Shown here in pieces: positions 3,657-54,400 of a DNA stretch of 64,000 nucleotides. The position numbers were made by a program, and so were the translations under genes. How positions within the stretch are numbered: the first letter of the stretch is position 1; every line of letters begins with the position of its first letter. Source of the stretch: Asterias rubens (Eukaryota); NCBI RefSeq assembly GCF_902459465.1, contig NC_047064.1:2294001-2358000 (forward strand). Direction: 5' to 3'. A model generated the notes under the pieces. The model saw only the letters and a list, made by a program, of their open reading frames with translations, had not been told where the DNA came from and ran no database searches.

Positions 3657-4037
3657 TTAAAGACAGTGAACACTATTTGTAATTGTCAAAGACCAGTCTT
3701 CTGACTCTTCTCACTTGGTGTATCTCAAAATACGCATAAAATAACAAATCTGTGAAAATTTCGCTCAATGTATTATTGGTCGTCGAAATTGCGAGAGAAT
3801 GATGGAAGAAAAAGCGCCCTAAGTTGTGTGCTTTCAGATGCTTGATTTCGAGTTCTCAAAATCAAATTCAAACATTTTAGTGCGAGATTACTTCTTTCTC
3901 AAAAAGTACTTTACTTCAGAGGGAGCTGTTGCTCATAATGTTTTATACTACCAGCAGCTCTCCATTACTCGTTGCCAAGTAAGTTTTTTTGCTTATAATT
4001 ATTTTTAGTAATTACCAATAGTGTCAAGTGCCTTTAA
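3657..4037 (+). mobile_element. Kolobok-like non-autonomous DNA transposon, family A
   Basis: TTAA flanks, AG...CT termini, imperfect TIR agacagtgaacactatttgtaatt / aattaccaatagtgtcaagtgcct; homologous to six other copies in the window. Confidence 0.8.
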
Positions 4038-8200: not shown

Positions 8201-10647
8201 CCTAAGACTGAAGCCTAAAAACCGTGTCTTTTTATGATCGCGCGTCAATATTTCCGACGCCCAACCATCGCGCGACCGACTATAACTCGGCCTATAATGT
8301 AAAACATTTTTTTACTGGGTAAGGTTTGTGCGCACATGGAGTGTGAACATCAGTATAGGGTCACGTGTATGAGAACAAATAGTCGGTATTTATAGCGACA
8401 TTGGATGGGGTGTCGATAAGTTTTGTAAAGAACAAGTTTCAATCCCCAACCAACCATTTAAATGTATCCAGTCAGTTTCCCCCTGTGGCTTGAATTGACA
8501 AAGAAAAACACTTACAACCGTGAAATAAAATGTTGAATGATGGATCGGACACCATGTTCACGTTTTTGTCTTATTACCCAATCGGTGGCTGTAATCACTT
8601 TAAATTTGTCAAAGAATTTTTTTAATTTGTCCAATCAACGGGGGCAATCCAGACGAAATAAATTCACAGATTGCTCACTACCATAACAACCTTTACAACA
8701 ATAAGGCTAAGCTTTTGGATATAAATAATTACACCCATTTCTGGCTCATTACCGCACTATAAGACCCTACCTTTTAAGAGTACGCTCAATTTAAGTTTAG
8801 ATGTTCCTGGATTCTTTTTAGAGATGACATTGAACTGAAAATTGAACTGAAAATTTCACATAATTTCTGAAGTTTTATATTGTTACTTTGGTTTTCTAGA
8901 GCGGTATATCAAACTACTTATAAACGAGAAGTACGGACGGGGTACAAAATACAGCGAGTGTGTTGCCCTGGATACCGGACTAATGGAACAATGTGTAAAC
9001 GTAAGTATCATTATGTTCGAACAGTATCCAGGTTTCCTTTCAAATGAATTAATAATGCGATTTAAGCGCTATTATAGTATAGATGAGGGGAAATCTGTAT
9101 CTTAAAACTTTATAAAAAAGCTCTAACACATTTGGAAAGTGTATACACACTGAAAGATATATTTGTCTTGAAACAATTGAAAAGTGATAGTAAGTTTATG
9201 CATAATATCCGTAACGACTCTTTATACATTTACTATATCATCACTGGCTTTAACAAAACAAGCTCAGATTGTGAGGAGTATTATTCTGTCCGGAGTGTCA
9301 GATGTCTTGGGTTCAAGTCCAAATGCGGACCATGTTTATTTTTTATCTCATTCCATGTTTTGGTTGTTGGTGTAGGGACCATACCAATATTAGTGTGTAA
9401 CGGTTTTAGCAATTAAGCCATAAATAACTCAATGCAAAAAACTCCATCAGTTATACTATTCGTACTATTTCTTGCTTTTGTGCCGAATAACTTTATCAAT
9501 TTTTTTTACAGCTTGTCTACCAGGATCCTATGGCATCAACTGCGCCTTCCCTTGTTCATCGTTATGTTTGAAGTCCGAGTATGGTTCCTGCCGCCCTGCA
9601 GACGGTCGATGTACATGCCTATCGGGATACTTTGGAGTCATGTGCAAAGAGGGTAGGTACTAGACTTTAGTATTTGAATTATGAATACCAATATATTAAA
9701 AGGAAATAATGTGTTCGTACCTTACACTTGGTTTAAAGGTGGGTTGATTCACAAGAATGGGATCACCTCAAGTAAAAGGGTTTTTGTTCTCTCTTTTTTT
9801 TATCCAAAGATTTTTTTTTTATAGTAAAACTTTGCATAACAATAACAGTTTCTTAATTTTTTTCTGTGAGTAATTTTTTGTTTCTTCTTTTCTTCATCTG
9901 GTTATTACCAGAGTGTCCCTCTGACCGGTATGGTCCCGACTGCCAGCACCGATGTAGCTGTTCAGACACGGCGGCGTCGTGTGACAAGGAAACGGGGCTG
10001 TGTCGATGCGATCCCGGACAAAGGAACGAGCAGTGTCTAATGGCGATGAGTTCAAGATGTGAGTTGTGAGATGCAATATATTGCCCACTTTCCTCAAACA
10101 AATTTGTAAAGGAAATGCAATAAGTGTTAATTTATCAGCTTTGAAATTGTTGTTTAAAAACAGCATTGATTTTTAAAGTCACCCTTAAAAAAAAAAAAAA
10201 TTGTTTGCTCAGTGCGTGATCATCCGCGATGGCATAACTGAACATTCATATGCCCTGCTATGAAAAGCTTCAATCCACAGGCCTTCATTTTTTTAAGGAT
10301 ACAAAGAAGTACATTTTATATTTATGAAGAGTTACAAAGTTTTATCGTTTTCCAAACAAAGGATCACAATTTTTTTTTTTCATTATTAAATCTCACATTT
10401 AGTTTGGAAGGACCTAAGAAACGCCCTAAAATAATGAGTTTCCATTTTTGTTAGGGAAAGGGCCCGTGTTCAGCAATGTTCCGGTTCTAATAAAAATAAT
10501 TACAGAAGGTTGCTTTTCAGATGTGAGTATGTCAATTTTATGTATGTTTTTTTCTCCTTCTATTTTACAGCCGATGGCTACACAAGATCATCACATCCTT
10601 TGACATTGCTGTTGTTCTCGTTGTTCCACTTCTTTACGTACAGCTAA
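5175..10647 (+). CDS. EMI-domain + 2 EGF-like repeat protein with C-terminal GPI-signal-like tail (MEGF10/Draper/CED-1-like, short form), 5' incomplete
   Basis: Five exons join in frame: FKEMVTVPAVTVSHHRVFYAPCGDFVKLFMCTARR|AVYQTTYKREVRTGYKIQRVCCPGYRTNGTMCK|PCLPGSYGINCAFPC...CTCLSGYFGVMCKE|ECPSDRYGPDCQHRCSC...CRCDPGQRNEQCLMAMSSR|SDGYTRSSHPLTLLLFSLFHFFTYS*. Confidence 0.8.
5426..5799 (-). mobile_element. Kolobok-like MITE family A
   Basis: TTAA|aggcactgtacacgtttggtaat ... attaccaaacgtgttcagtgcct|TTAA. Confidence 0.85.
6016..6260. mobile_element. Kolobok-like MITE family C
   Basis: TTAA|agggtctaggtacttttt ... aaaagtacccaaatcct|TTAA. Confidence 0.75.
6257..6664 (+). mobile_element. Kolobok-like MITE family A (shares a TTAA with the family C copy)
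   Basis: TTAA|agacactggacactattggtaatt ... aattacccatagtgttcactgcct; internal homology to other A copies. Confidence 0.8.
7315..7964. mobile_element. Non-autonomous DNA transposon with 19-bp TIR, 9-bp TSD and internal ~30-bp repeats
   Basis: TIR tagccttgtccaaggctct / agagccttggacaagacta (1 mismatch); TSD gattcgcac at 7306-7314 and 7965-7973. Confidence 0.85.
8145..8293. mobile_element. PIF/Harbinger-like MITE
   Basis: ~30-bp TIR aggccggtttatagtcggtcgcgcgatggt / accatcgcgcgaccgactataactcggcct in a T(A/T)A-like context. Confidence 0.75.
8900..9000 (+). CDS. EMI gene exon (101 nt, phase 2 to 1; Y...Y.....CCPGY end of EMI domain)
   Basis: ttctag| and |GTAAGT; CCPGY motif. Confidence 0.85.
9512..9652 (+). 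CDS. EMI gene EGF-like exon 1 (141 nt, phase 1 to 1)
   Basis: tttacag| and |GTAGGT; C.PG.YG.NC...C...C...C...DG.C.C..GY.G..C. Confidence 0.9.
9912..10058 (+). CDS. EMI gene EGF-like exon 2 (147 nt, phase 1 to 1)
   Basis: taccag| and |GTGAGT; CP...YGPDC...C.C......CD..TG.C.C.PG. Confidence 0.88.
10571..10647 (+). CDS. EMI gene terminal exon encoding a hydrophobic GPI-signal-like tail
   Basis: tttacag| acceptor, in frame SDGYTRSSHPLTLLLFSLFHFFTYS then TAA at 10645-10647. Confidence 0.7.
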
Positions 10648-12549: not shown

Positions 12550-12649
12550 ATGGTGTTCGAATCGCTTGTTGTGGACTTGCTGAACCGTTTTCTTGGCCAA
12601 TATATTGAGAATCTTGATGCATCGCAGTTGAAACTTGGCATTTGGGGAG
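12550..12649 (+). CDS. VPS13A/C: VPS13 exon 1 (100 nt, [33 protein letters not shown])
   Basis: gaaaATGg start context; donor AG|GTGAGT; phase 1. Confidence 0.97.
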
Positions 12650-15600: not shown

Positions 15601-18600
15601 AGGTTACATGTCCAACCCTATTCTTAATTCAGTTTAGCCAAGGACCTGCATATTGATTGATTGATTAAATATTTCAATGTTGTGACCTGGCTCTTTGTGT
15701 AATGGTCCCAATGTTTGCAGACCACTTTACATCAATGCACAATGTAGAAATTCTTTGAGAAAGTATGGTAGTAATTTCCCCCTGTATGGTTGTTTCTGTT
15801 ATTTGAGTACCCCTCCCCCATCCTCTCTGGTCAGTTAAAGGGCCCCTTCCCTCTTTAGTTGACCCTTGTTGAATGGTATGTAAATATACAGCCCATAGCA
15901 AGGAACAGACCATGGATGCAGATCTCCTCCTCCTTTGTCAGGCCAACATACCACTAGTTAACGGTCTTACCACACATTGATCTGTTTGGGTGAAGAGACT
16001 AATAAACACCTTTTCATGGGCATTCAATAACGACAGTCATGATAGTGGTGCAGGACAGGCCTGGAATTTTGTCTTTAAGAAGAAGGCAAGGGTTGAAGTG
16101 ATGCAAAGGGCAACTTTTGAAGAGGCACAAAGACCAAGAACCAGGACAACAGAGACCGTGGGGGCATCGAGGCAATTTTCTTCGTTGCCTCTCAATAAGT
16201 TTCAGGCCTACGCACAAATAACGAGGGACATGATAATTTGGAAACAATCAGAATTATTTTGTGAACATAATTTTTTCCTTAGAAGTAAGTGTATTGGAAA
16301 TCCCAGGCCTGTTGTGACCTGCCTCACTTCTTCCAATTTGCTTTGATTCACTCCATTGATTCCCCTCTGAAAATTTTACCCCACAGAAAACAAACACATA
16401 ATGAGTATTACAAACATGCCTGTGTGTTTCGTGTTTACAAAAGCAAGGGCAGCAAGGCATTTTCTCCTTGGTAAGGGCATGCTCTGAGAAAATTGTCAAC
16501 TTCTACTGGATCATTTCAAGGGCACCAAGGCAATAATGACCAGGGGGGCATTGAGGCAATTGCCTTTGTTGCCTCCAATAAGTTTCAGGCCTACGTACAA
16601 ATAATGAGGGACATGATAGTTTGGAAATAATCAGAATTATTTTGTGAACATACTTTTTCCCCAAGTAAGTGTACCAAAAATGCAGAATTCAGCTTTGTAC
16701 AACCATCAGGATATACACTGTATTCACATGCCACATTTTTTAAATCAGTTTAATTTTTAATATTTTGTTCAGTACACACAGATGAAGTAGGCTACTGTTA
16801 ATAATTTGAGTTTGCACTTGTTGGCTTGTACACTTGTACAATGTACTCTCCATCTCTGGTCCACTAACACTACCAATCTTACAAAAGGGAGTTATTGGAT
16901 GTGATGTGACTGAAACAACGAGGGGTGACATATTGTTTCAGCAGCATACATGGAGTCTATAATGTTTCCCCCAAGCTGTTTCTTTCCAATTCTACCTCCA
17001 TGATGTAACATGTTTTTTGTTAGGCTTTGGGATTTATAGGCCTGACCTGGCTCTACAAGTACTACGTATGGTGTTCTACTCCTCATGTATTATGTTGACT
17101 CATAATATAATGCAAGCTAAAAAAATCCTTGGATTTCATTACCAAGCAGAGAAAATGAATGAGAGTGTAATTCAATTTTCATTAAGAAAAAAATCAATGC
17201 AATATAACGACGGCAAAGCTTTTGCAATGTAAGCATCTAGGTATAGTGTTAGGTCATAGAGCAAGGAATGGTTAGGTGTGCACTTGAAGCAAAGCGCTTG
17301 CATAGGTGTGCACTTGAAGCAAAGCGCTTGCATACATGTTCCCTGGATGGAATGTTTCTCTCATTCCACCGTGCTGTTTAACAGTAGGGACTCTACACTG
17401 ACCTAATGATGGACACTGAATATATTTTATACACAGGACTTGTATGGTACGCTCAGCCCTCTCAAAAAACTTTGTCTAAATTCAGACCTTTTTTTTTGTG
17501 TCTGCTCAATTAATGTTTTTTTCTTCTTCAAGATTATAAAAACATTATGCTCTACATGAACTTGCTGAGTAGACTGTTTCCAGAAGCTTTTTACAATACT
17601 TCCACGGGTTACCATACGGTGGATATGCCATCATTTCAACAAACCTACTAAAATTAGGATCTTCCAAATTAGGACTCAAACCCCTGATGGTTCACAAATT
17701 GTACGAAAAACAACCAAGTAAATATGCTTGTTTTTGTTTTAAAGCTTTGTTACAGTGTATTTTATGTATATCATCAACATTTTCTTTTGTGTGAACTCCT
17801 TGTTAGCAAAGATGGCAAGGGTTAAACAAAAAAGCAGCCCATCATACATGAATATGTGTTTTGGCCACTGTATTCATAAACACTCAATAGGGCCTATGCG
17901 AAAACAGACAAAAAACATCTAATAAACATTACATTAATCCTTTGTGTGTTTTTGTTAAATGTAGGAGATGCTGTTCTTCAAAATTTGGATGTGAAGGAAG
18001 GAGCTCTGGTAAGCACAACTTAAGGATTTTCATATTTTATTAATATATTTTTGTACTGGTTTTAAGGGCTCATACTTTACCATGGACCTCATGCCATAGG
18101 CCAGTGACTTTTGTACAGGTCAGTACGCTTTTCCCTTCAAACACTAACTGTCTGATCAATTTCTCTTTCTATGTCAAGTAGTGAAATAGTCTTGCCAATA
18201 ATATATGAGATCAGTCTTCTCTCCATGCTCCCTCAAATGAAACAAGTTCAAGTTTTAATTGTTTTTGTTTTCCATTTTCAATTTTGGTCTTGAATAAAAA
18301 ATATTCCCAATAGAAAACACAGATATCCCAGAAGAACCAATATCCCCCCCCCCCCTCCCGAACCAAAAGCAAATAAAATTGTTTACAAAAAATAATGAAA
18401 CAAAATTGTTAACATAAACTTGTTATCATTTATGAATGGTAGTTCAATGAAAATATGTTTGTTCTGGTACAGGAAATGGCCCTTTAAATTGCCACCTGTA
18501 AGAAACATTTGAATTAATAACTATTTCATATCTATAGCCTTGATCGTAATAACAAGGTCTTTGTCTGGAATATCCATCCAGCACACCCAGCGCATGATCT

Positions 18601-27600: not shown

Positions 27601-30600
27601 AGCTGACTGCTAACCTTGTATTTGTTTTTAATAAGAATCAAGAATAATTATATTATTACTAATAAAATTATATTTATTTTGGTTTTTACCCATAAACTGA
27701 TGTCTGTTAGCGCTATATACTCGGTACTTACCCAGGTTCTGTGAAAAAAAAATCACAGGCATTTTTACTCAGGTGGGATTCAAACCCACGACCTTTGCAA
27801 TTCCAGAGCAGTGTCTTACCAACTAGACCACCGAGATTGCCAGGTGGCTAGAGGCAGTTCGAAAACTATAAATAAAACCTATCATTTTCTAGGTGGAAAT
27901 TTTATCAACTGCCAGACTCGTATATTGTACATATGTTCTACCCACAAAATAATATGCTGAATCAAAACTTGCTATGTGACACACCATGCATAAATCAGAC
28001 ACTTCTTGGAAAAAGTGAAATGGCATTTAAATTTAAAATTGTTAGTGAAGTGCAACAATTGATACAATATTTGTTTTAGGCATGGTAGCTCTGTAACAGC
28101 TGGTGCATACACAATGATAATTCACACTAAAATAATTTTATCTAACGACCTACATCTTTAATCTTAAAAAAAACTTTCTTATCAGTTTTTAAAGGGACCC
28201 AAGTTCAAACAACAAATCAATTTTTGTCCTGACGCATTTGATAATTTTGTTTCTGGTTTTGATGATTGATTTTTACTGCAAATAAGAACTCAAATTTCAG
28301 TGATATTTGATTGTTTGCGTAGATATCAAGTACGATGCAGAGAAGGATTCCCAGCAGAAGTTTGAGGCCAAACAACGGACCCTGCAGATGGTGGAGGACA
28401 CTAAACAGAAAGAGAAGGAGAGAGAGGAAGGCGCAGGTTAGAGGTCATGACCCTTGACCCAATTTATTCCAGATTAGAAATCATTTAACTCATTCAATAA
28501 TGTCTACCTGAATTGAGCTATAAGACTTTTTAATGGATGTTAAATTTTGCATCGATGATGCAATATATTTTTTTTTCTTGTCAAAGTTAAATAGACTGAA
28601 CATGTTTGGTTGTTGTCAAAGACCAGTCTTCTCTCTTGGTGTATCCCAGTATCCCAACATATACATAAAATAGCAATGTGAAAATTTGGACTCATTTGGT
28701 CATTGAAGTTGCAAGAGAATAATGAAAGAAAAAAACACCCTTGTTGCACAATTTTGTTTGAGTGAGAAATGATCTCTTTCTCAAAAACTACGTTACTTCA
28801 GAGGGAGCTGTTTTCCACAATGTTTTATTCTATTAACAGCTCTCCATTGCTCGGTATCAAGTAAGTGTTTATGCTAACAATTATTTTAGTAATTACATGC
28901 ACCAATAGTGTTCAGGGTCTTTTACACCGATGAAAAAAATCCTCAAACTTCTTGAATAATTTTCCAGAGAAAGATGCCAAGGCTGACTCGTTTGTGGAGA
29001 AGATGGCCAGTCAGGTGATTAAGAACCTTCAAGTCAAGGTATCTGACATCCATATGCGCTATGAAGACAAGACAACTAATACGAATGCTCCATTCTCTAT
29101 TGGAACTACACTTCATAACGTCTCACTCAAGGTAAGAACGGGTTGCTGTAGATGGGGTGTATTTACTTATTTATTTATTTACACAAAACCTCCAAAAATG
29201 GAGAAGATGAAAATACATAAAACTTACATAAAAGGTACATATACACGCGTGCTTAAGGAAACAGGATCTAACCCAGTCACACTCATTGATGACCCCAGAC
29301 CATGAAGAAGTAAAAAACAAAAGGATGGGTATAATCCCTATAAGGGTTATGCCCCAACAAGTGATGTGCACAAGTGATATAAAACTCACAGGTCTTACTA
29401 TTAATCTCTCATGTGATATGAATCTAACAAGGGTCTATCTTGAGGACAACGAACCTCTTGAGGCGACACAAGTGGTACATATGAGCCTTACATGCAATAC
29501 TTATTACCATGTTTTCAAGTACCATACTTTCAAATGTCAACTTTGAAAAAAGATCTGAGTTGGTTTTTTATCTTTATGAAATAAAATTATAATAATAATA
29601 ATAATAATACATGTTATCTAAGCATTTATATAGCGTTCTTACACAAAACAATGTATCACAACGCTTTACAACAATACTAACAACCTGGAACCATACATGA
29701 TTTGGTACATATGAGCCTCACATGCAATACTTATTGCCATGTTTACAAGTACCATACTTTCAAATGTCAACTTTGAAAAAAAAGATATGAAAGATCCGAG
29801 TTGGTTTTTATCTTTATGGAATAAAACTTTTAAGTTTTGAAAACCACACAGTACATATTTTAATTGAGTTGGTTATGGGTTACAATGGCATCCCCAGTGG
29901 CCTAAATGTCCTTGCCCATGCTACAGAGAGCTCTGCCAACATGGCTAAAGATTTGAATTTCTTTGTTGATTTTGCAGACCACAGATACCAACTGGAAGGA
30001 GTGCTTGGCGGATGCAGCAACTAAACTCATTTACAAGGTACGTTTACAAGTTTAGTGTTAAAGACACTGGACACTTTCGCCAGTTGTCAAAGACCAGTCT
30101 TCTCACTTGTTGTATCTCAACATATGCATAAAATGACAAACCTGTGAAAATTTGAGCTCAATCGGCCGTCAAAGTTGCGAGATAACAATGAAAGAAAAAA
30201 CACCCTTGTCACACAAAGTTGTGTGCTTTGAGATGCTTGATTTCGAGACCTCAAAATCTAGATCTGAGGTATCGAAATCCAATTCGTGGAAAACTACTTC
30301 TTTCCCGAAAACTACTCCACTACAGAAGGAGCCGTTTTTCACAATGTTTTATACTACCAACCTCTTCCCATTACTCGTTGCCAAGTAAGGTTTTATGCTA
30401 ATAATTATTTTGAGTAATTACCAATAATGTCCACTGCTTTTAGACAGTGTTGAAGCTAGACCAATTTTAGTGGTGGGCTCTAAATCAAATTTAGTCCACC
30501 AAGGGTGAGCAGTTCAGCAAAATTCTTCAAGTTTAGATATGGGGCCACCATTGCTGAAGTGCAATCTAGGGGGATATCTTTGCTGGGCAGCACAGTGTAT

Positions 30601-39600: not shown

Positions 39601-42600
39601 GACATGAAGAACCACGACGAGAGGTAAGAAGCATCAACAAGATTTCTTATATTCAGGCTTTAGTCTTACTACTTTAGTCTGATTTCTGATTTTCTGATAT
39701 TTTCAGGGCCCTTCCTGTTATACAGTGTTTTTTTTACCAAATAAGTAAGATTTGAAACTTTGCATGTTGTGAGTATAATAATAACAATAATAATAGTGGT
39801 TTCTTATATAGCACTCAGGTCCGTCATGCAGTGACGCTCATGATGCTTCAACATTATTACCCCTGGTCACTGGGCCTTAAAACATTCCTTAAACCATCTT
39901 AGCTCCGTGTGGATTATACAGCCTTTGCCGCCAAATATGTAGCGCACTAAGCTAATCAGTCACAAGAACCAACTTTGCCCTCACATGTACCCATTTACAC
40001 CTGGGTGGAGAGGAGCTTATGGTTAAGTGTCTTGCTCAAGGACACAAGTTTCATGACAGGGATTCGAACCCAGAACAGAAACATCAGAGCTTGATTTCGG
40101 TCCTCTTATCCGCTCGGCCATGACACTCCAACGGGGTATTATCAGTTGCGGAGTTGCGGGGTATAATCAGTCTTTTGAGTAGGGTTGTAATGTTAGCTGA
40201 AGGTTCTTTTTATAACCAACACTACTCAAAGGAGATTTACACACTGCTACCACAAACCTCACCTAATTATAAACCAAATAATACAAATAATAATACAATA
40301 ACATATTTCTGTGCAGAATGAATCTTTGGATGATTTAATGAAGAAGGCTTATGATGTGTTCAACATTGAGCTTCAATCAGTACAGGTTATCCTGGCTGCT
40401 GCAGGTGAGTAACCAACCCCTGCTTCCATCTGTCCATGTGTCGACTTATGTGATTGGTCAATTAGCATCCGATTATCTGTACTTCTCTGTGTCAATCCCT
40501 CCTATTGGTCATTTAACATATATACATCATCACTTCCCTCAATACATTAAAATCAAGTTTTAAAAAATGGGAAAATTCCAACTTTAAATAAATAAAACAA
40601 AATTCCATAAAATCTAAATTTACTGTTGGAGGTTGTTATGTGACCGCAACACCATGTGTATATCTACTTGCTGGGTAAATTATTTTCATTTTAAAACTTG
40701 TCTTGCTATTAATAAATTAATTCTACTACCGCAGAGTAGATTTTTTCGGAAATCAGGAGACTTCTCTAATCCCTTAGAGTAGATTTTTGGAATTCAGGAG
40801 CCCTCTCAGTTCTAAAAAGAACTGTCCTGCTTCATAACTACTACTTGGGTGGAAGGGAGGAAGTCGACCGGGACGACTACTTTCACTCCTTGAATCGAGG
40901 GGATTTCTTGTTATTAACTTCACGTTAGGTAGCGGAAGGTACATATATGACATCGGCCAGGACTACTGCTTTCGCTCAGTGGATCGAGGAGACTTCTCGT
41001 TATTAACTTGACTGTATGTTCTTTGTATCAGGTGATGACTGGGGTGAAGCCAGGAAGCTTGGAGGGTCACCTCTTCATCTGTTGCAGCCACTGGATCTCA
41101 AGGTTGGACTTCATAAATGCTTTGTGGAAGATTCTAGACTCGCCCAGTAAGTTTAAGTCTTATAAGTTTGTTTTTTTTACTCTCACACCGATGTGTAATA
41201 AGCAGTGTATACTTGGTACTTTCCTGAGTTCTTTTGAAAACAAATCCACATCGGTGAAAGGGGAAAAATCGCATTGTGATCTTTATCCCTTGATGCAAAA
41301 ATTAACATCTATTCATAAATACCTAAGACAGTTTATCCATTCTGATTGGTCTAAAGGGCATCACGAGGTTTTGTTTGAACAGATGATATAACACCAGTAA
41401 AAAGTGTTATAACATGGGCGTGACACGCGCGCTTGCACCTGTGCGTATAAGACAGTTTCTTCATTCCTATTGGTCGAGAGCAACGGCCCGGACAGTTGTG
41501 CCACGTCATGCGATACGCGGTATGCCCACATCATTCCCTTATAAGGAGTTGTTTACCCGATCGGGCCGAGGGCCTAACCATTTCATAGCTGGAGGGGTGT
41601 TGTGTTGAAAGAAATCATTGAATAATTATAATTTTTGCATTTATTTTACCTTTTGACCAAAAAGTGTTGATGTTTTTTGACCGAAAAGGTATTTATGAAT
41701 GGGAATCAAAGTGTGTTGAATCGGTTTACAACTAGTGGTTTAAACTCGCGAGGCCTGGTTCGTGATAATTCACCTTGACTTCGTCTCGGTAAAATTATCA
41801 AGTCCAGGCCTCGGCGCGGGTTTAAACCACTAGTTGAAAACCTCTTCACCACACATTGATTCCCTTATTACATTTAGCCTTCTCAGAAGCAATATCATAG
41901 TGTCAACAGAGTATCTAGCAAGGGCGTATTAGCCAATGGGAGACTTTTCTGATCATTGGGTGGCAGCAGAGTAAACCCATTGTTCTCGTAGATGTGCGCA
42001 TCCTCAGAACTACGTAAACAATGGTAATTTACCTGGTGAATCTACTACTATCTAGCACTCTAAAACCGTTTACACGACAGTTACTGGTTGAATGGCATCT
42101 GACCCGGCACCATCAAACCAAGAGATATTGACAGAATAGAGATATTGCCAACATAGGGCTAGATAGCTCAGTTGGAAGATCGACTCCAACTTTATTTGGA
42201 TGTCATTGACGCAAGTCCGCTCTAGTCAATTTGTCTTTGTTCGACTGCAAATAAATATTTGTTGATGAAATGAAAAAATTTTTTTCCCAAACATTCAACT
42301 CTAGACAGAAACGTAGTATTGTATATGACAAAAATGTCAATAAAGGGTTTTTAAGTGTTAAAATTTAACGGTTAAGTTGTCAATTTCAATTAATTTATTG
42401 TCCATCTAAAAGATAAAATTTGCAAATTTACATATCTAAACATTAATGAAAGCTCCAAACCAGAACACTAAAAAATACAGTTATAATGATAAAACTAGAT
42501 TTACACATACAATTTTACAGCGAAAAAAATAATTTATTAAATTTTTAATGCAACAATAAAACCCAACGTTGATTACACCCAACTCAGGATTAAGATAACA

Positions 42601-45427
42601 GGAGAGCTGCCCGATGTGACTGTGGACGTGTCCGACTACAAACTTCAAGAGCTTCTGAAACTGGCTCTGAGTATCCCGGTCCCCGAGTTAAGCAAAGAAC
42701 CTGAGGAGAAGTTCTCAAGGGTAAGTCACATCTTCCATCTTGAGAGATTGCATTCATTGGGGTGTACATGTTGGTTGAGTTACTGGTAAGAAGCTAGATG
42801 GAAGAGGTTTTGGTGTTTGACAGGGAAAAGACCGTGCAAGTCTCGCGTATATTGGAATTTTTGTGTGATTATTTTGGTCCCTTTGGTAACTTGTGAAGGA
42901 AACAATACGCGCAAGACTTGCACAGTCTCTTGTGCCTTTGATGGTAAAAGCATGGAATGGAATTAAGCATGCTGTTACAATACATCATGAGAAGGATGTT
43001 TGGACAATCTGCCGTGGCCCTACAGACAAATCGTTTTCTTGTGACATATTCTGACTGGGTGCCAAGTTCCATTTCATGTTTGTATTATCTTAGGCAAAAT
43101 CCCATCACCTGCCTGCAGACCTAATCCCTGGTAACTTCAACATAAGCCTGTGTTTTCACATTGTGGTATCATTGGTACTCTGTAGATAGGAGATTTGTTT
43201 TAGACTTGTCGCTCTAGAACGGTAATACATGTAGGTTGGGTTGTAGCATGGAGCTTCCGAGTAACTGTTTTTGTTGATCATTAAACCCAAAGTTGAATAT
43301 ATGTAGCATTTGCATAGATTTATTATATCGCCCTCACTGAGGTAAAAACACACCAACCTATTATTGACTGAGAATTATGCGCAGACTATGGTGGACTTTT
43401 GAGATGCAGGGAATTTATCCATTATATCTGCCGCTGTATCTTGTATCTAAAGTCCGATATCAGGCAGCTATTGGATTTCATATTCACACTGAAATCCAGC
43501 GTCTTGTTCAGCCTATGTACATGACGCTGGACTATTTATTGTTTGAAAAGAAAAGGGTGTGATAAAAATTGACCCTAAATTGCAAAAATGCTAGATTGAA
43601 ATTTGCCACATTTCCAGATATCTTTTGGATTTCTTATTCAGACCGCAATCTTAAAGTCCAGCGTCTTGTTCAGCCTATGTACATGATGCTGGACACTTTT
43701 TTTTTAAAAGAAGAGGATTTGAAAGAAATTAACCTAAAATTGCAAAACTGGTAATTTAGAATTTGCCACATTCCCAGAGATCTGCCATTGCAATATGTGT
43801 ACTGTCTGTAACCTCCCCATTGTTATACAGGACAAGCTGTTTGTATCCTCCGATCAGTCCCTGGGTGTAGCCATCGATGGCTCTCTATCTGTAGTAAGTT
43901 TTGAACGACCAAATGATAGCTCCGACTCGGATGAGTATTTTACAGCCAGCGAGATCTTTTTTGACCAGGCAAGAGTCAATACTAGCTCAACGAATGGATA
44001 TCCATTTGTGGTTTTTGTTTCTAATCGTTTCTTTTCTGTTCCACTTGATTGCATTTTGGCCTGACACCATAACGCTCACTTGTTTTTTTAACCATCCAAC
44101 GTTTGTGACCTGACTTCCCTTATAACAGATTTATGAAGGAAATCATTCAGAGATAATTGGGGGTTTGAAATAATACATGTATGACATACAGAGCCATCCA
44201 TGTTTGCTAGATCTTAAGAGGATGTCAGGCAATTTACAGGCAACCAGCTCCAGGCAGTTTTCTCATTATTTTCTTGGGGACAGTGTTTTATAAGCTTCTG
44301 GGGTCGATTTCACAAAGAGTTAGGACTCGTCTTATCTCAAGTTAGGACGAGTAACTCGTCCTAACTTAGGATTAATCTTAAGGTCTGCATGCTACAGTGC
44401 AGGTTTGGGACTCGTCCCAAAGTCCTAAGATTAGTCTTAAGTTAGGAAGAGTTTTGTGAAATCGACGGCTGTGCTGCCCAAGTTGTTTCTTTTGCATACA
44501 GTTTAACTGGTTGCCTCTATGTTGCTTACAAAAACTTGCCCGGTGTAACATGGCCGTAAGGAAAAGTGTGACACCATCACCATGAGGTGTTGTCAGTCTA
44601 AAAAAAAGACTTAGGCCACTTTCATTTTGCGAAGGGCACTTTCACTGCAAAATCATGAATCCTGTGGGAAACTTTTGAAGGGGCACCAAGGCCAAGACCA
44701 GGGGCAACAGAGGCCATACTGTAGTAATCTGTTTGGTTTTGCTGCAAATCTTTTGATTCTGTGAAACTATGGAATCTTTTTAAAAAAATATTTAAAATAA
44801 TAATTTACGAGTGGTGTTTGTTCCTTCAACATCATGAAGTGTTCTATGTGTTGATGGAACGTCGACTGTTGCTACTTTCAGACTGGTGTGGGAGGTCAGG
44901 TCACACTTGCAGATAAGTTTCTTGCTGATCATGCGGTGCTGGTTTTATTTCTAACATGCTGAGACATAACCCTACTAAATAATTAAGTTTATCTAACTAC
45001 ATGTAGCATTAACAGTGCTGGCTCGGCAGTGGTTCGTCATGCTTTTTCTTGTTCAAAAGTATGAGTGAATCAAATTCACTGGAATTCATTCGTCCTCAGC
45101 CAAATTTAGTGTTTGTAATTTCAAATGTCTCGATAGTTCAAACTTAAGTTGGCAACAAACGTTACTAGAGATCCCCTCTTTGCCTTTATTATTCATTTTT
45201 TCCATGAACTAAAATAACTAATGATGACAATAATAACTAACTCAATTCAAGAATACAATTATTTCAATACTCTCATAAAAGAATAACAACAGTTACATTT
45301 ATTACGGAGTAAAGCAAAACATTTTTTTATGTAAGAGTAAACATGAATAAATAAGTAGAGTACGGGGCCGTTTTGGTAAGCATAAGCTTGTAAAAAACAG
45401 CCAGACAGACAAGAAAACGAGACAACC

Positions 45428-48400: not shown

Positions 48401-51400
48401 GTAATTCTAAACATCTTCCTGACTGTTGTAAAAAAAACTCTCTGATTGCAAGATGCAAATGTTGGGAGCTCTTTTGTTAGCTCTTTGTGAAACTGGGATA
48501 TTTACTTTTTGATAGCTTTTTTAATGTTTTGTACACTGCTTTTGAAATGTAATAATGGTTTGTGTTCATCTTTACAATCCAGCCATCATTTTAATTTATT
48601 CATGGTGAGGGTATTACAGCCGTTTGTTTGTCAAGCTACATCCATGTTTAAATTAATTTGGGCGCTTGAAATTACACTTCAAGGGTATCAAACACAGTGG
48701 CCCATTACACAGTTTTAATGTTAGGAGTAAGAGACTTGTAATTTGATTTCATTTTTATAAGATGTCTATCTCTTGGAAAAATGAATTGTGTTTAGAGAGA
48801 CATTACTGAACTGAGCTGACACGAGATTAACCTTAACCAATTAACTCACTCTAACCTATTGAACACACTTTTGAGCTTGTTTAAGTTATTGTTCAACAGG
48901 AAGTTATGGCATGGTTTAAAAAATGAGGGACTTCAAAGTTTCTGCCAACATTTGCCATGAGGGGGTTTTTACATCATGTTTTTTTTATGTTATTGTTGCT
49001 CATATAGAGAGATCCACTCTTGCCGGCAGACAAGCCCATCACAGCTCCCGTCGGGAAGGAGGTTGTCAAGGCTGGGGAGGAGAGTCTTGCAGACACACAA
49101 CGAACCAGCCTGGAGCTCCAGTTTGAACTCAAGAAGGTATGTCAGCTCAAATCTAAACGAATATAAAAACATTTTCATTATTTTAGTTTTCCTAATCATA
49201 ATTAAACAAATAACAACCTGATTGTTTGAAAGAATTAATATAAATAAGTAAAAGAGTCATATCCCTATTTAAAAGAATGGTACGCTTCGCTTTACTGCTA
49301 TTGTCATTGGGGAGACCTGAGTGCTAAAAAAATGTCTACGGCCCGCACCAGGACTTCTCGCATGTTCATGTAAGTCCATTCTTACACAATGTCGAACCAA
49401 CTCTTTCATACATGTGAGCCTTTTTGAGATATGGCCGACACAATGCTACAACACTATAAGGTTTGGGTAAATTTGTGTATGTATACACCGAAACCAAGCA
49501 GGACACCCCTATCACGCCCGCCATACCTCAAAAAGGCTTATTGGTGTCCTCCCTCGACAGTCTCCTGCATCATGATCTTGCATAGGTTGTTGTATCGCAT
49601 AAACTGTTACACTGTGTTTTTGTTTCTCTTTGAATATCAGGTGGGTCTAAACTTGTCCCAGCGATGTTCTGGTGAAGAGAAACCACTTATATCTGTTGCT
49701 ATCCACGCTCTGGGTACTCAAGTACGTATGAGACCATGGGATATGAGTGCTACTGTATCCCTGGGTAGCGTGTCTGTTCAACATAGGCAGTTCAAAGGTA
49801 AGGACTGAAAGGTCAAAGGTAAATACTGATAACCAAATTTAGTAAGTAAGGCTTGCAGTGACACCATGTACAGCCCGGTTCATACTTCCTGCGAATGTGA
49901 ATGCTACACGATTTGTTACGTCACAGCTCCATTTTCGCTGCGAATATTTCGCAGGAGTTGAGCATTATTCAACTGGTTTTCTTTTTTTAACAGGTTTACA
50001 GTTTTCTCTTCATTTCATAGGGAATTACTCAACAGAAAAACTATTTCTAGTATGAACTTCATAACCTATGGGGTTTGAGGCATTACATAGTGAGGTATCA
50101 AGATATATGTGGTGTGTGGTAACACCATGTGTGTATCTACTTGCCAGGTAGAGTTTGTTCTTAGAGAACTGTCATTCTTTATTCTACTAACGCGGAGTAG
50201 ATTTATCGGATGTTCGGGAGACTTCTCAGTTCTGGAAAGAAACAATCCAAGAACTGACTCCGCGATAGTGCAGTTAATTACGCTCCTAAGTTAGTAGTCC
50301 CAACCAATTTTCTATACTTTCCGCCCGGGGAGTAGTTAAAAAGCAGGACAGTTCTTTTCATAACTGAGAAGTCTCCCGAACATCCGATAAATCTACTCCA
50401 CGGTAGTAGAATAAAGAAAGACAGTTCTCTAAGAAAAAAACTCTACACACGCGGTGTTACCACAAACCAAATGTATATTTTCAGACTACATTTGTTTATC
50501 TTTACCAATATTGTAAGCAGGCATCAATTTGTATTTTTTACTAGTTTGTTGACGAATAATACAAATGATAAATTTTTGATTTAGTGTTGAGATGATTTAT
50601 ATAAGCTGTTAATTTTATTACTTGATGGATATGTTTACAGCTTTGGATGGTGGTGACCTGTTCTTGGTTCAGACACCAGCTTATGAAAAAGGGACAGACA
50701 GACTTTTGTCAATCAACTACCAAAAGGTAAGGCTCTATCAAGCCTGGGATCCTGATTGGTCGTTTTGAACATTTCCCTATATTATTTTTATGAAGTCATT
50801 GCTTAAAAAAATATGTTTTTGTATTATAAGAATTATTAGAAAAAAAGGTAAAATAATTTTTTTTACTTCAAATTTTGCCGATTTGACCCCAATTTTAATC
50901 CTAGATACAAACCTTAAATGAAAACTTGGTTCAATATACGTAACTGGAATTGAGGTCCACATTGAAGGGCAGAACAAGATGCCATAAGCCACCTGATCTC
51001 CAAATAACCATGTATTCTGGAATAACATACTTCATGTGTAAATAACTACACATGAATGTGTGACATTTCAGTCAGTTGCAAAAAAAAGGAGCACTGTGCC
51101 TTGGATCGGTCGAGTTGGTCTTTGAAAAACGTATTAACCGTTTTTAATAAAATGCATATGGGTAGAAAGATGTAAAAGTAGAATACAATGATCCACACAA
51201 ACATGCCTCGAAACTGCACGGTTTTTCTTTTACCTCGTTGACTACCATGGTCAGCCATTTACGGGAGTCAACTTGTGTGGATCATTGTATTCTACTTTTA
51301 AAACATCTTTCCAACCATATGCATTATATCACAAACGGTTATAAACGCTTTTTATAAACCAATTCGTCTGACCCAAGGCAACCTTAGCAGAATGACAACA

Positions 51401-54400
51401 CAGGTACACAAGTGTAATAGAAGCAGTGAAGTGGAACTAAAAATGTCAGTCAGTTTGTGGAGTGCAGGCACGTAAATCCGGAGGGCGCAGCTTCTAGGCC
51501 ATCTCCAGTCAAATTTTCTTTGCTCAACCCAAAATTATTTCCATAAAAAAAATTCCAACTTCACTTAAATCTTATGAATCTATTCCTCCCCCCATCACTG
51601 ACCCCTTCTAGGCAGAGAAGAAGAGCCCAGAGTTTGCCACCACCTACCAGTCAACAGAGCAAGACATCACCGTCAAGTTCACCACCCTAGAGATTGTAGC
51701 CCACTCCGATGCCATTCTCAATTTAACAGACTTTGCAGACACCCTTGTAGCTAGTCTAGACACCGGGAAGGGGGCAGCCAGTGGGGCGGAGCCTGAAGAT
51801 GAGGGGTACCTCAGTGAAGACGAGAAGAAACCAAAAGGTGAAAGGTCAAGGGATTTAATAGATGGGTGCTAAAAGAAATTCATGGTCATCTTTAATAATA
51901 GAGGTTAAATTTGCACCGGGGATAAAGACAATTATTTGTTTTTACTCTTACATCGATGTGTGTAAAGTACTGTTATATTCCGAGTCATGTGAACAAAATC
52001 CACAGAAATTCAATGTTGTCATGTTTTGTAATGTTAATGTTTGGAAAAGAACTCCCCAATACAAACATTTAGTTTTGGTTATATTCAATCTTACAATCTT
52101 GCACCATATCTTGAAGGATGCTGGCTCCACTAAATCTCAACCTTTTTTTACAGGGATTGAAAATATTTATGATTTTGATGATGCCATAAGCTTGAAATGA
52201 GGCATGAGATTCTTCCTCTTAATACTAGTCTGATTTTCAATATTTTGGCCCTCTGTAAAATTGTTATTACATAGCCTGAAAAATCTATAATGACTTAAAG
52301 GGAAGGTACACGTTTGGTAATTACTCAAAACAAGTATTAACTTAAAAACTGACTTGGTAACGAGCATTGGAGAGCTGTTGATAGTGTTAAACATTGTGAG
52401 AAACGACTCCCTCTGAAGTAACGTAGTTTTTGAGAAAGGTAATTTCTCACTTAAAGAAGTATTTTATTCCTATCTGAAAGCACACAAATTCGTCCAAAAA
52501 GGTTTATTTTTTCTCTCATCATTTTCTCGCGATGACCAATTTAGCTCAAGTTTTCACAGGCTTGTTATTTTATGCTTATGTTGGGATACACCAAGTGAGA
52601 AGACTGGTCTTTGACAATTACCAAACGTGTACCTTCCCTTTAAACCATGTAAATGTGGGCAGACCTTGTACAATTTTCCCATGGGTCAAATAGAAGTCAC
52701 TCAGGACTTTGATGTTGTGTCCTTTTTGTCATTTGTGTCCTCATAGGCAAGAGAGTAAAGAGATTGAAGCCAAGTGACACCATTGACGTAAAATTGACAG
52801 CCGATCTAGACGTCATCTCCCTGGTCGTGTGTACTAAAGACACCAGCCTGACTGAAGTTAACATCAAAGGTAAAAATGCTGCCTCAGTGCTGAAAGGTTT
52901 GCATGTACAATATCATTTTGTAAAAATCAGAAGTGCCTGATGTTGAATGGCAGTAAATCAGGACAAAATAATCATAAGATTAAAATATCAAGTAACAAAC
53001 CACAAAAGAAACTACTTTTTGGGTAAATTTTGGGTTGAATAAGGAGAAATTGACTATAGCTGAAATTGAACCTGTGACAACTAGATTCAAGTTCCGGATT
53101 TCTACCAAATGAGCAATCTATCTAACCCTTTCTTCATCCCCAAATTTTGACATTTTCGTTTTTAAATGAACACGTTGCCTTAGATCGGTCGAGTTGGTTC
53201 ATAAAAAACGTTTGTAACACCGTTTGTTATAAAATGCATATGGTTGGAAAGATGTTTTAAAAGTAGAATACAATGATCCACACAAATTTGCCTCGAAATT
53301 GTGAGGTTTTCCTTTTACTTTGCGAACTAACACGGTCGGCCATTTATGGGAGTCAAAAATTTGGCCGACCGTGTTAGTCGACGAGGTGAAACCGTGTTAG
53401 TCGACGAGGTAAAAGAAAAACCGGGCAATTTCGAGGCATGTTTGTGTGGATCATTGTATTCTACTTTTACACCATCTTTCTACCCATATACATTTTATAA
53501 CAAACGGTTACAAACGCTTTTCAAAGACCAACTCAACCGATCCAAGGCAACGTGTTCCTTTAAGTTTTGGCATAAATTGGGTTTACAACTTTAAACAGTT
53601 TTAACAGTATTCTCATTCTGCTGTGATTGTTATGAGTTCCGTGATTTGATTTGATTGACACGCAGGGCTGAAAGCTGGAGTTTTACTTCAGAAGCATGTT
53701 ACAACAGTATCAGCCCTCCTTCAGGATATCACGGTGACAGACCCAACACCAGGGGCTTTATACCCCAAGGTAAGACTCTACAAGTCACAAGAGAGATCAA
53801 ACAACTAAGCATATCCATGATGTGTAATCAGGGCCCAGTTTCATGGCTCCGCTTACCACCCAATTTTGCGCTTATCATCACCATTCTCTGCTTACTGGTC
53901 AAGCGCCAATTTTCTCGGAAAGTCTAGTTAACCTATCGTAATAAAGGACCAAGCCAAATGCACTATAGTCAGCCAGTCTTTTATTTTGTTATCAGCCGTT
54001 TAACGGAAGGGCACAGTTTCAAAAAGTAAAAAATTAGTTAAGCATAACAAAATTACGCTAACCAAATAAGGTTATTAGCCAAACTGCCGTGTCACAACTA
54101 CAATTTGTGACTGGTATCCTGCTCATTTCTGCTTAGCAGACAATTGTTAAGCAATATTTTCTGCTTAAGCAGCTTTATGAAATTGGGCCCTGGTAAAAAT
54201 TATCACGTGACCACCGTTCAGCCAATAGGACTCCCTAAACTTTGATATTTATGAATAACGCATAACATCTCTGACTGATTTCAGATTGTCTCCTTCGTCG
54301 ACGATGAGGTGTTTAAGGTTAAAGCTGAGTTGTTCAACGGCTCCACTGCAGCGGATGGATACTCTGATATGAGTGCTGTAGACATTCGAGTTGGTCTGAG

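What the first reader, a model, noticed from the sequence alone, without database searches (positions are those of the whole stretch)
43831..43968. VPS13 phospho-FFAT motif sits between competing GT and GC splice donors: a possible two-layer ER-tethering switch
Seen in sequence: exon 22 reads ...GSLSV|[25 protein letters not shown]|. A full GTAAGT donor follows 43893 and a CAG|GCAAGA donor follows 43968. They are 75 nt apart, both phase 0, and both join in frame to exon 23. After the motif there is no good GT donor before the frame stops at 44064. Established knowledge: VPS13A/C bind the ER protein VAP through an FFAT motif (acidic tract + EFFDAxE) at about this position (~aa 848 here), and FFATs with Ser/Thr at position 4 are phospho-FFATs that need phosphorylation to bind VAP. 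Inference: the proximal GT donor would delete exactly the acidic tract and EYFTASE (43933-43953). The weaker non-canonical GC donor would keep a phosphorylation-dependent FFAT. ER anchoring of this lipid bridge could therefore be controlled by both splicing and a kinase.
Basis: partly seen in the sequence, partly recalled or inferred. Interest (0 to 1): 0.78.

Follow-up and report, generated by a model that had tools for sequence, protein, structure and literature searches.

The report
Splice-switched ER-anchor motif in sea-star VPS13
In a sea-star lipid-transfer gene (VPS13A/C-like), two competing splice sites conserved across sea stars decide whether the protein carries its only good ER-docking (FFAT) motif, and that motif has a phosphorylatable Thr/Ser where vertebrates have Asp.

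Summary
The window is the Asterias rubens VPS13A/C-like gene: RefSeq XP_033624316.1 threads exactly through 40 exons. Exon 22 starts at 43831. An in-frame GTAAGT donor follows 43893 and a CAG|GCAAGA donor follows 43968. The 75 nt between them encode a Ser/Asp tract plus EYFTASE.

The splicing layer is supported by comparison, not by reads.
- Both donors, their 75-nt spacing and the reading frame are conserved in A. amurensis, Patiria miniata and Acanthaster planci.
- A. amurensis and Patiria have all three forms. A. rubens has only short and skip.
- Synonymous sites in the extension are over-conserved (13 of 15 codons against 51% gene-wide).
- The segment lies in a predicted disordered loop and holds the only strong FFAT-like motif in the protein.

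Ser/Thr at motif position 4 is general in echinoderm and hemichordate orthologues, while vertebrate VPS13A has Asp. Phosphorylation dependence and VAP binding are inferred, not tested.

I obtained no junction reads, because the single read-laying run was lost to a filter. The isoforms are in public annotation but I found no paper describing them. This is a new variant of known kinds: phospho-FFAT as in VPS13D, and splice-tuned FFATs as in protrudin.

The parts
42588..42720 (+). Exon 21 (133 nt, ends ...EEKFSR, donor AGG|gtaagt). It joins directly to exon 23 in the exon-skip isoforms.
   Evidence: Exact threading of P0286. Skip isoforms are A. rubens X5, A. amurensis X7 and Patiria X7.
43831..43893 (+). 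Exon 22 core (63 nt, 21 aa). It is common to the short and long forms and poorly conserved in sequence.
   Evidence: This is the short form in A. rubens X1-4 and X6.
43894..43899 (+). Internal proximal donor GTAAGT. It encodes Val-Ser when read through.
   Evidence: Invariant in four sea stars although the flanking codons vary. My PWM gives 7.6 bits, the 36th percentile of 154 donors.
43894..43968 (+). Alternative 75-nt 3' extension of exon 22 (25 aa), carrying the Ser/Asp tract and the FFAT-like core.
   Evidence: Present in the long RefSeq isoforms of A. amurensis and Patiria. It is in frame and 75 nt long in all four species. Synonymous conservation is in excess.
43915..43932 (+). Acidic and phosphorylatable flank DSSDSD (aa 842-847).
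   Evidence: The stretch GATAGCTCCGACTC is invariant in four species.
43933..43953 (+). FFAT-like core EYFTASE (aa 848-854). Tyr is at position 2, Thr at 4, Ala at 5 and Glu at 7.
   Evidence: Position 4 is T, S, T and S in the four sea stars.
43969..43976 (+). Distal GC donor, CAG|GCAAGAGT.
   Evidence: Invariant in four species. It is the only GC-AG intron among the first 45 introns in A. amurensis and Patiria. It is used by the long RefSeq isoforms.
43961..43979 (+). Possible small hairpin UUGAC/GUCAA with the GC donor in its 9-nt loop.
   Evidence: RNAalifold consensus. The sequence is invariant, so there is no covariation. This is weak and unproven.
49008..49136 (+). Exon 23 (129 nt), the common acceptor for all three forms. 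It has no FFAT-like motif in sea stars.

Best explanation
Exon 22 of the Asterias rubens VPS13A/C-like gene is a conserved three-way alternative splicing unit.
- The distal GC donor after 43968 gives a long form. Its 25 extra residues lie in a disordered loop of the lipid-transfer rod and carry the protein's only strong FFAT-like motif ([13 protein letters not shown]).
- The internal GTAAGT donor after 43893 removes exactly that segment.
- Skipping the whole exon removes it too.

All three products stay in frame.

By inference, only the long form can dock on the ER receptor VAP. Position 4 of the motif is Thr/Ser, never Asp/Glu. Docking therefore most likely also needs phosphorylation, probably by an acidophilic kinase, since T-A-S-E fits the CK2 S/T-x-x-D/E pattern.

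Shown here: the sequence anatomy, conservation of both donors, the frame and the motif, isoforms in the public annotation of related sea stars, and the disordered context. Inferred: use of the GC donor in A. rubens itself, VAP binding and phospho-dependence.
For: Sequence anatomy and gene identity:
- Sequence and frames were read directly.
- The window equals the A. rubens gene, with exact threading of P0286 through 40 exons.
- Pfam finds VPS13_N, VPS13_M, VPS13_VAB and VPS13_C.

Isoforms in RefSeq:
- A. amurensis: long X1-5 and X9, short X6 and X8, skip X7.
- A. rubens: short X1-4 and X6, skip X5.
- Patiria: long X1-5 and X8, short X6, skip X7.
- Acanthaster: short only.

Conservation of the splice sites:
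- The genomic loci show xxx|GTAAGT and GACCAG|GCAAGAGTCA exactly 75 nt apart in all four species.
- This is the only GC-AG intron among the first 45 introns.
- The GC donor has a near-optimal context apart from +2 (93rd percentile without +1/+2). The GT donor is mid-strength at the 36th percentile.

Constraint on the extension:
- Asterias-Patiria 4-fold site identity is 0.42 gene-wide.
- In the extension, 13 of 15 same-residue codons are identical, against 0.506 gene-wide (P=0.004).

The motif:
- It is the only strong FFAT-like hit in the long forms and is absent from the short forms (my own crude scheme).
- The loop at aa 805-891 has pLDDT below 50 and no secondary structure.
- S/T at position 4 occurs across echinoderms and hemichordates, against D in vertebrate VPS13A.

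Literature:
- The VPS13A FFAT is at aa 842-848 and D845A weakens VAP binding (PMC6389287).
- ORP1 D478S binds VAP only when phosphorylated, which defines the phospho-FFAT (PMC7705450).
- VPS13D binds VAP through a phospho-FFAT that needs T770 (PMC8077184).
- GC donors are enriched at alternatively spliced sites (PMC2490688).
Against: - I have no read-level junction evidence.
- A. rubens RefSeq lists no long isoform, so use of the GC donor in this species rests on identity of the site with A. amurensis.
- RefSeq isoforms are models. I could not inspect their RNA support or their relative abundance.
- The k-mer shares of the runs are ambiguous. The 0.27 share in the organism-A RNA runs is equally explained by species divergence in the extension.
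- The published FFAT scoring matrix was not available, so the motif was judged by position and by my own crude score.
- Phosphorylation, the kinase and VAP binding are untested.
Confidence: 0.7

Rival explanations
1. The GC donor is effectively constitutive. The internal GTAAGT is a low-level cryptic site, and the short isoforms in the annotation are splicing noise with no function.
For: - Long forms are the majority of the models, and include X1, in A. amurensis and Patiria.
- The GT donor has a poor exon side (GTA|, CGT|, GTT|).
- The relative abundance of the forms is unknown.
Against: - GTAAGT is invariant in four species, at synonymous positions too, while neighbouring codons diverge.
- The short form is the only exon-22-containing form annotated in A. 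rubens and Acanthaster.
- A perfect +1 to +6 donor upstream of a GC donor would be expected to compete strongly.
Confidence: 0.12
2. In A. rubens the GT donor is the real exon end, and the 75 nt are intronic in this species. The motif would be a relic that is no longer expressed.
For: A. rubens RefSeq has only short and skip forms.
Against: - The 75 nt keep an open frame, the motif and the GC donor. The donor context is identical to A. amurensis, where the long form is annotated.
- Four runs of unknown type from organism B (inferred from the run shares to be the window's own species) hold 64-100% of the long-exon words. They are not holders of the 5.9-kb stretch, which fits spliced RNA that carries the extension. 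This is weak evidence.
Confidence: 0.06
3. Splicing is the only switch. The motif binds VAP, or another MSP-domain protein, without phosphorylation because the acidic flank compensates. Alternatively it is not a VAP ligand at all but another acidic short linear motif.
For: - The flank is very acidic (D842, D845, D847, E848, E854).
- Position 5 is Ala, as in conventional FFATs, rather than the Pro seen in STARD3 and VPS13D.
- No binding data exist.
Against: - ORP1 D478S, a conventional motif with Ala at position 5 and only position 4 changed to Ser, lost binding unless phosphorylated (PMC7705450).
- D845A weakens the VPS13A motif (PMC6389287).
- Position 4 is kept as S or T in all ambulacrarian orthologues seen.
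- By eye, the sequence does not fit an LIR core ([WFY]xx[LIV]).
Confidence: 0.2

Closest known systems
Human VPS13A FFAT motif (aa 842-848, EFFDAPC) and the VPS13C FFAT
   Same: - Same protein family and the same loop of the N-terminal rod, at nearly the same residue number (848-854 here).
- An acidic flank, an aromatic residue at position 2 and Ala at position 5.
- The sea-star motif aligns with the vertebrate motif in MAFFT, though alignment of disordered regions is only approximate.
   Different: - Position 4 is Thr/Ser, not Asp.
- The motif lies in an alternatively included exon extension. I found no report of splice removal of the FFAT in vertebrate VPS13A or VPS13C.
VPS13D phospho-FFAT (aa 767-773, Y768 and T770; Guillen-Samander 2021, PMC8077184)
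   Same: A VPS13 paralogue that docks on VAP through a motif with Thr at position 4, and that needs a phosphorylatable residue.
   Different: - It is a different paralogue, since the window's N-terminus is of the A/C type.
- VPS13D has Pro at position 5, whereas here it is Ala.
- No splice control is described for VPS13D.
Phospho-FFAT class (Di Mattia 2020, PMC7705450), including the engineered ORP1 D478S
   Same: S/T at position 4 in an otherwise FFAT-like core. ORP1 D478S shows that an Ala-5 motif becomes phosphorylation-dependent.
   Different: That class is defined experimentally in human proteins. Here it is only a sequence match.
Protrudin exon L, an SRRM4-dependent microexon next to its FFAT (PMC5247714)
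   Same: Alternative splicing modulates a VAP-binding motif.
   Different: In protrudin the microexon adds 7 residues beside the motif and tunes binding. Here the whole motif and its flank are included or removed by donor choice or exon skipping.
GC-AG introns at alternatively spliced donors (PMC2490688)
   Same: A GC donor with an otherwise strong consensus, paired with a competing GT donor.
   Different: This is a general class. The specific case is not described.

Membership tests
VPS13A/C-type bridge-like lipid transfer protein | VPS13 N-terminal (chorein), middle, VAB and C-terminal regions in order | tested here: met
   P0286 threads exactly through window exons 1-40. Pfam finds VPS13_N (1.5e-241), VPS13_M, VPS13_VAB and VPS13_C.
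VPS13A/C-type bridge-like lipid transfer protein | A/C-type rather than D-type or B-type paralogue | tested here: met
   - The N-terminus [16 protein letters not shown] matches the VPS13A/C hits, whereas D-type hits start MLEGL.
- The best named relatives are VPS13A-like or VPS13C-like.
Conventional FFAT motif (EFFDAxE in an acidic tract) | Aromatic residue at position 2 | tested here: met
   Y849, which is Y in all four sea stars.
Conventional FFAT motif (EFFDAxE in an acidic tract) | Acidic residue (D/E) at position 4 | tested here: not met
   T851. The four sea stars have T, S, T and S.
Conventional FFAT motif (EFFDAxE in an acidic tract) | Small residue (Ala) at position 5 and an acidic upstream flank | tested here: met
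   A852, with the flank DSSDSD-E.
Phospho-FFAT (Di Mattia 2020) | Ser/Thr at position 4 of an otherwise FFAT-like core, in an unstructured cytosolic region | tested here: met
   - T851.
- The loop at aa 805-891 has pLDDT below 50 with no secondary structure.
- The definition is taken from PMC7705450.
Phospho-FFAT (Di Mattia 2020) | Score below 3 with the published position weight matrix | not testable with these tools
   Table EV4 is not held, and Slee & Levine 2019 is not held. Only my own crude score was used.
Phospho-FFAT (Di Mattia 2020) | Binding to the VAP/MOSPD2 MSP domain only when position 4 is phosphorylated | not testable with these tools
   This needs a peptide pull-down or ITC.
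Alternative 5' splice-site event | Two donors in the same phase that join the same acceptor in frame | tested here: met
Alternative 5' splice-site event | Both junctions present in transcripts | tested here: inconclusive
   - Both are in the RefSeq isoform sets of A. amurensis and Patiria.
- In A. rubens only the short and skip forms are annotated.
- No transcript fragments turned up in the protein collections.
Alternative 5' splice-site event | Conservation of both donors in relatives | tested here: met
   Four sea-star genomes.

The most novel reading that the evidence does not exclude
ER anchoring of the VPS13A/C bulk lipid bridge in sea stars may be gated entirely at the RNA level.
- An anciently conserved GT/GC donor competition, plus exon skipping, would do the gating.
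- Sea stars lost the second, constitutive S/T-type motif (EF[LMH]SA[DE]E) that urchins, brittle stars and crinoids keep in the next exon.
- The Ser/Thr-4, phosphorylation-dependent FFAT would be the ancestral ambulacrarian, perhaps deuterostome, state. Vertebrate VPS13A would then have fixed it 'on' by a change to Asp.
- Motif-less isoforms would work at contacts that do not involve the ER, or act as untethered competitors.
Probability: 0.35. Interest if true: 0.65.

Novelty: new variant of a known kind. Interest (0 to 1): 0.5.

Why it matters
How cells regulate where and when VPS13-type lipid bridges engage the ER is an open question. In mammals the VPS13A and VPS13C FFATs are treated as constitutive, and only VPS13D is known to use a phospho-FFAT.

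This locus points to a natural system in which the same anchor is controlled twice, by splice choice and probably by a kinase. The splice architecture is conserved across sea-star orders. It gives a directly testable pair of isoforms, with and without 25 residues, for asking what an ER-untethered VPS13 does.

It also shows that Ser/Thr at FFAT position 4 is the rule in echinoderm and hemichordate VPS13A/C orthologues.

The impact is moderate. Both principles have precedents, the organism is not a model for cell biology, and the isoforms already sit undescribed in public annotation.

Tried and rejected
A second try beside those places was blocked by the cap. No letters of 44770-44808 were sent as a query to any search tool afterwards.
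- I considered using the run k-mer shares as isoform evidence and rejected it.
  - The 0.27 share in the organism-A RNA runs matches both 'short form only' and plain divergence. A. amurensis has 6 substitutions in the extension and none in the first 63 nt.
  - Runs X12-X15 fit spliced long-form RNA, but their type is unknown.
- Searches for transcript-derived protein fragments gave nothing useful.
  - The 161-aa query found only a genomic ORF (P0310) from marine metagenome scaffolds.
  - The 421-aa query found nothing.
- A metagenome scan for the start of exon 23 found nothing.
- The published FFAT matrices were not retrievable.
- The loci of Lytechinus and Diadema could not be fetched because the genes exceed 100 kb. 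The echinoid counterpart of the donor pair is therefore untested.
- A conserved RNA structure was considered. Only a small invariant hairpin around the GC donor appears, with no covariation, so it is not claimed.
- By eye, the motif does not fit an LIR (LC3-interacting) core.

Full report
**Observation.** Reading the window confirms every detail of the finding.
- Exon 22 starts at 43831 behind ...tatacag.
- It reads [21 protein letters not shown], then [25 protein letters not shown].
- GTA|GTAAGT follows 43893 and CAG|GCAAGA follows 43968. They are 75 nt apart and both are phase 0.
- Exon 23 starts at 49008 ([10 protein letters not shown]...).
- The frame closes at 44062-44064.
- With a donor PWM I built from 154 GT donors of this gene and two orthologues, no other candidate between 43831 and the stop exceeds 1.5 bits.

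**What gene and whose.** The gene starts at 12550 ([16 protein letters not shown]..., A/C type) and runs on the + strand to the end of the window.
- An exhaustive profile search and a word search gave echinoderm VPS13A/C-like proteins.
- The Asterias rubens RefSeq protein XP_033624316.1 (P0286) threads exactly, residue for residue, through 40 exons of the window. The window is therefore A. rubens, and the exon in question is coding exon 22.
- Pfam finds VPS13_N, VPS13_M, VPS13_VAB and VPS13_C in that protein.

**Isoforms in public annotation.** The 90%-identity clusters hold many RefSeq isoforms. At exon 22 they fall into three classes.

| Species | Long (GC donor, with motif) | Short (GT donor) | Skip (exon 21 joined to exon 23) |
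|---|---|---|---|
| A. amurensis | X1-5, X9 | X6, X8 | X7 |
| Patiria miniata | X1-5, X8 | X6 | X7 |
| A. rubens | none | X1-4, X6 | X5 |
| Acanthaster planci (one model) | none | the single model | none |

A third form, whole-exon skipping, was missed. All three forms are in frame.

**Conservation of the splice architecture.** I fetched the orthologous loci of A. amurensis (L001), Patiria (L002) and Acanthaster (L003).
- All have xxx|GTAAGT and GACCAG|GCAAGAGTCA exactly 75 nt apart, in frame.
- The four extension peptides are:
  - [25 protein letters not shown] (A. rubens)
  - [25 protein letters not shown] (A. amurensis)
  - VSVDAHTDSSDSEEYYTASDRFLDQ (Patiria)
  - VSPDDQSDSSDSEEYYSASERFLDQ (Acanthaster)
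- The codons around GTAAGT vary freely, but the hexamer does not.
- In A. amurensis and Patiria this is the only GC-AG intron among the first 45 introns.
- The GC donor is otherwise near-optimal (93rd percentile when +1/+2 are ignored). The GT donor is perfect at +1 to +6 but poor on the exon side (36th percentile). That is a plausible balance for competition.
- Asterias and Patiria are close to saturation at 4-fold sites (0.42 identical). Yet 13 of 15 same-residue codons in the extension are identical, against 0.506 gene-wide (P=0.004). Patiria against Acanthaster gives 18 of 19, against 0.665 (P=0.005).
- Such excess synonymous constraint is what overlapping splicing signals produce.
- A small invariant hairpin would place the GC donor in its loop. 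Without covariation I do not claim it.

**The motif.**
- The core is E848-Y-F-T851-A-S-E854, behind DSSDSD.
- Measured against the conventional FFAT (EFFDAxE), positions 2, 5 and 7 and the acidic flank are met and position 4 is not.
- That is exactly the published definition of a phospho-FFAT (PMC7705450).
- In the same paper, changing only Asp-4 to Ser in ORP1, which also has Ala at position 5, abolished VAP binding unless the Ser was phosphorylated.
- In VPS13A, D845A at position 4 weakens binding, and the motif sits at aa 842-848 (PMC6389287). This is almost the same residue number as here.
- Position 4 is T, S, T and S in the four sea stars, through independent single-base changes (ACA, TCA, ACA, TCG). 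It is never another residue.
- T-A-S-E also fits the CK2 pattern S/T-x-x-D/E. This rests on my own knowledge and is an inference only.
- A crude scan of my own, which is not the published matrix, finds this as the only strong FFAT-like site in the long proteins. No comparable site exists in the short ones.
- An AlphaFold2 model of aa 560-1010 of the A. amurensis long form puts aa 805-891 in an unstructured loop (pLDDT about 30) between well-predicted strands. A short linear motif needs such a setting.

**Wider comparison.** S/T at position 4 is general in ambulacrarian VPS13A/C-like proteins.

| Group | Motif |
|---|---|
| Urchins | EF[LM]SADE |
| Brittle star | EFHSADE |
| Crinoids | GYFTPCE plus EFLSAEE |
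| Hemichordates | EFYTPSQ |
| Vertebrate VPS13A | EF[FY]DA |

- In the crinoid Antedon, the positional homologue of sea-star exon 22 is also 138 nt and phase 0. It ends just after GYFTPCGGD and is a cassette exon, skipped in isoforms X3 and X4.
- Crinoids, urchins and the brittle star carry a second S/T-type motif in the next exon. Sea-star exon 23 has none. In sea stars the alternatively spliced motif is therefore the only one.
- Hemichordate isoforms all keep their motif.
- Lytechinus variegatus has an optional 24-aa segment that begins Val-Ser and contains GYETASE, and the listed L. pictus isoforms lack it. This may be the echinoid counterpart, but the loci were too long to fetch.

**What I could not do.**
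There are therefore no junction counts.
- The run k-mer shares do not settle the matter. RNA runs of organism A hold 0.27 of the exon words. Organism A looks like a diverged congener: its genome-sized run holds only 0.32 of the stretch. A. amurensis differs from the window at six positions of the extension and at none of the first 63 nt, which alone gives about that share.
- Four runs of unknown type from organism B hold 64-100% of the long-exon words without being holders of the 5.9-kb stretch. I infer organism B to be the window's own species, because its runs X6 and X7 hold about 0.6 of the stretch. The pattern fits spliced RNA carrying the extension but proves nothing.
- Protein-fragment and metagenome searches for spliced junctions were empty.

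**Mechanism and odds.** I put about 0.7 on the full reading.
- The reading is a conserved three-way splice unit that includes or removes the sole FFAT-type ER anchor of this lipid bridge, with the included motif needing phosphorylation at T851.
- The splicing part alone I hold at about 0.8, and phospho-dependent VAP binding at about 0.6.
- The rivals are:
  - the short form is noise (0.12);
  - the extension is not expressed in A. rubens (0.06);
  - the motif binds without phosphorylation or is not a VAP ligand (0.2).

**Novelty.**
- Phospho-FFATs are known, including one in VPS13D (PMC8077184).
- Splice-tuned FFAT binding is known for protrudin (PMC5247714).
- GC donors are known to be enriched at alternative sites (PMC2490688).
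- The isoforms themselves are already in RefSeq.
- My literature searches found no description of splice removal of a VPS13 FFAT, nor of the S/T-type FFAT in VPS13A/C orthologues.
- I therefore rate this a new variant of a known kind, of moderate interest.

Noticed in passing
window 42720^49008 (exon 21 joined to exon 23): Whole-exon-22 skipping isoforms exist in RefSeq for A. rubens (X5), A. amurensis (X7) and Patiria (X7).
   Followed up: yes
Lytechinus variegatus XP_041460359.1 (P0274), about aa 830-855: An optional 24-aa segment begins Val-Ser and contains GYETASE. It is absent from the 15 listed L. pictus isoforms. It may be the echinoid counterpart of the sea-star donor pair. The DNA was not fetchable because the gene exceeds 100 kb.
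   Followed up: partly
L006 16296-16433 (Antedon mediterranea exon 21): The crinoid positional homologue of exon 22 is also 138 nt and ends just after GYFTPCGGD. It is a cassette exon, skipped in isoforms X3 and X4. A 30-nt microexon follows it (18005-18034) and is also dropped in X4.
   Followed up: partly
window 51612-51837 (exon 26): A second acidic Tyr motif, [12 protein letters not shown], is conserved in Patiria and partly in crinoids. It has Glu at position 5, so it is a poor FFAT. Its function is unknown.
   Followed up: no
L001, L002 and L003, near protein residues 2100-2133 (outside the window): Exact protein-to-genome threading stops at the same place in all three sea-star loci, even with GT/GC-AG and AT-AC introns allowed. 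The cause is probably a very short exon or an unusual intron.
   Followed up: no
window 9424-10066, + strand: Cysteine-rich, EGF-like open frames (for example ...CLPGSYGINCAFPCSS..., ...CPSDRYGPDCQHRCSCS...) lie upstream of the VPS13 start. They probably belong to a neighbouring MEGF-like gene.
   Followed up: no
window 3823-4005, 6489-6635 and 30268-30414: Three copies of an interspersed repeat give near-identical translated frames (...[31 protein letters not shown]...).
   Followed up: no
L004 and L005 (ENA marine metagenome scaffolds, sample series SOLA22): Genomic copies of exon 22 and its flanks, identical to the window in the called ORF P0310, occur in environmental metagenome assemblies. 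This is sea-star DNA in seawater samples.
   Followed up: partly
hits (teleost VPS13C: P0267, P0198, P0180; budgerigar VPS13A isoforms P0238, P0259): Teleost VPS13C models show no recognisable FFAT in the homologous loop. Some Ensembl budgerigar VPS13A isoforms replace the FFAT region with other sequence. This could be a real difference or a model artefact.
   Followed up: no
This cost the only read-laying run, so later work should lay beside them.
   Followed up: no
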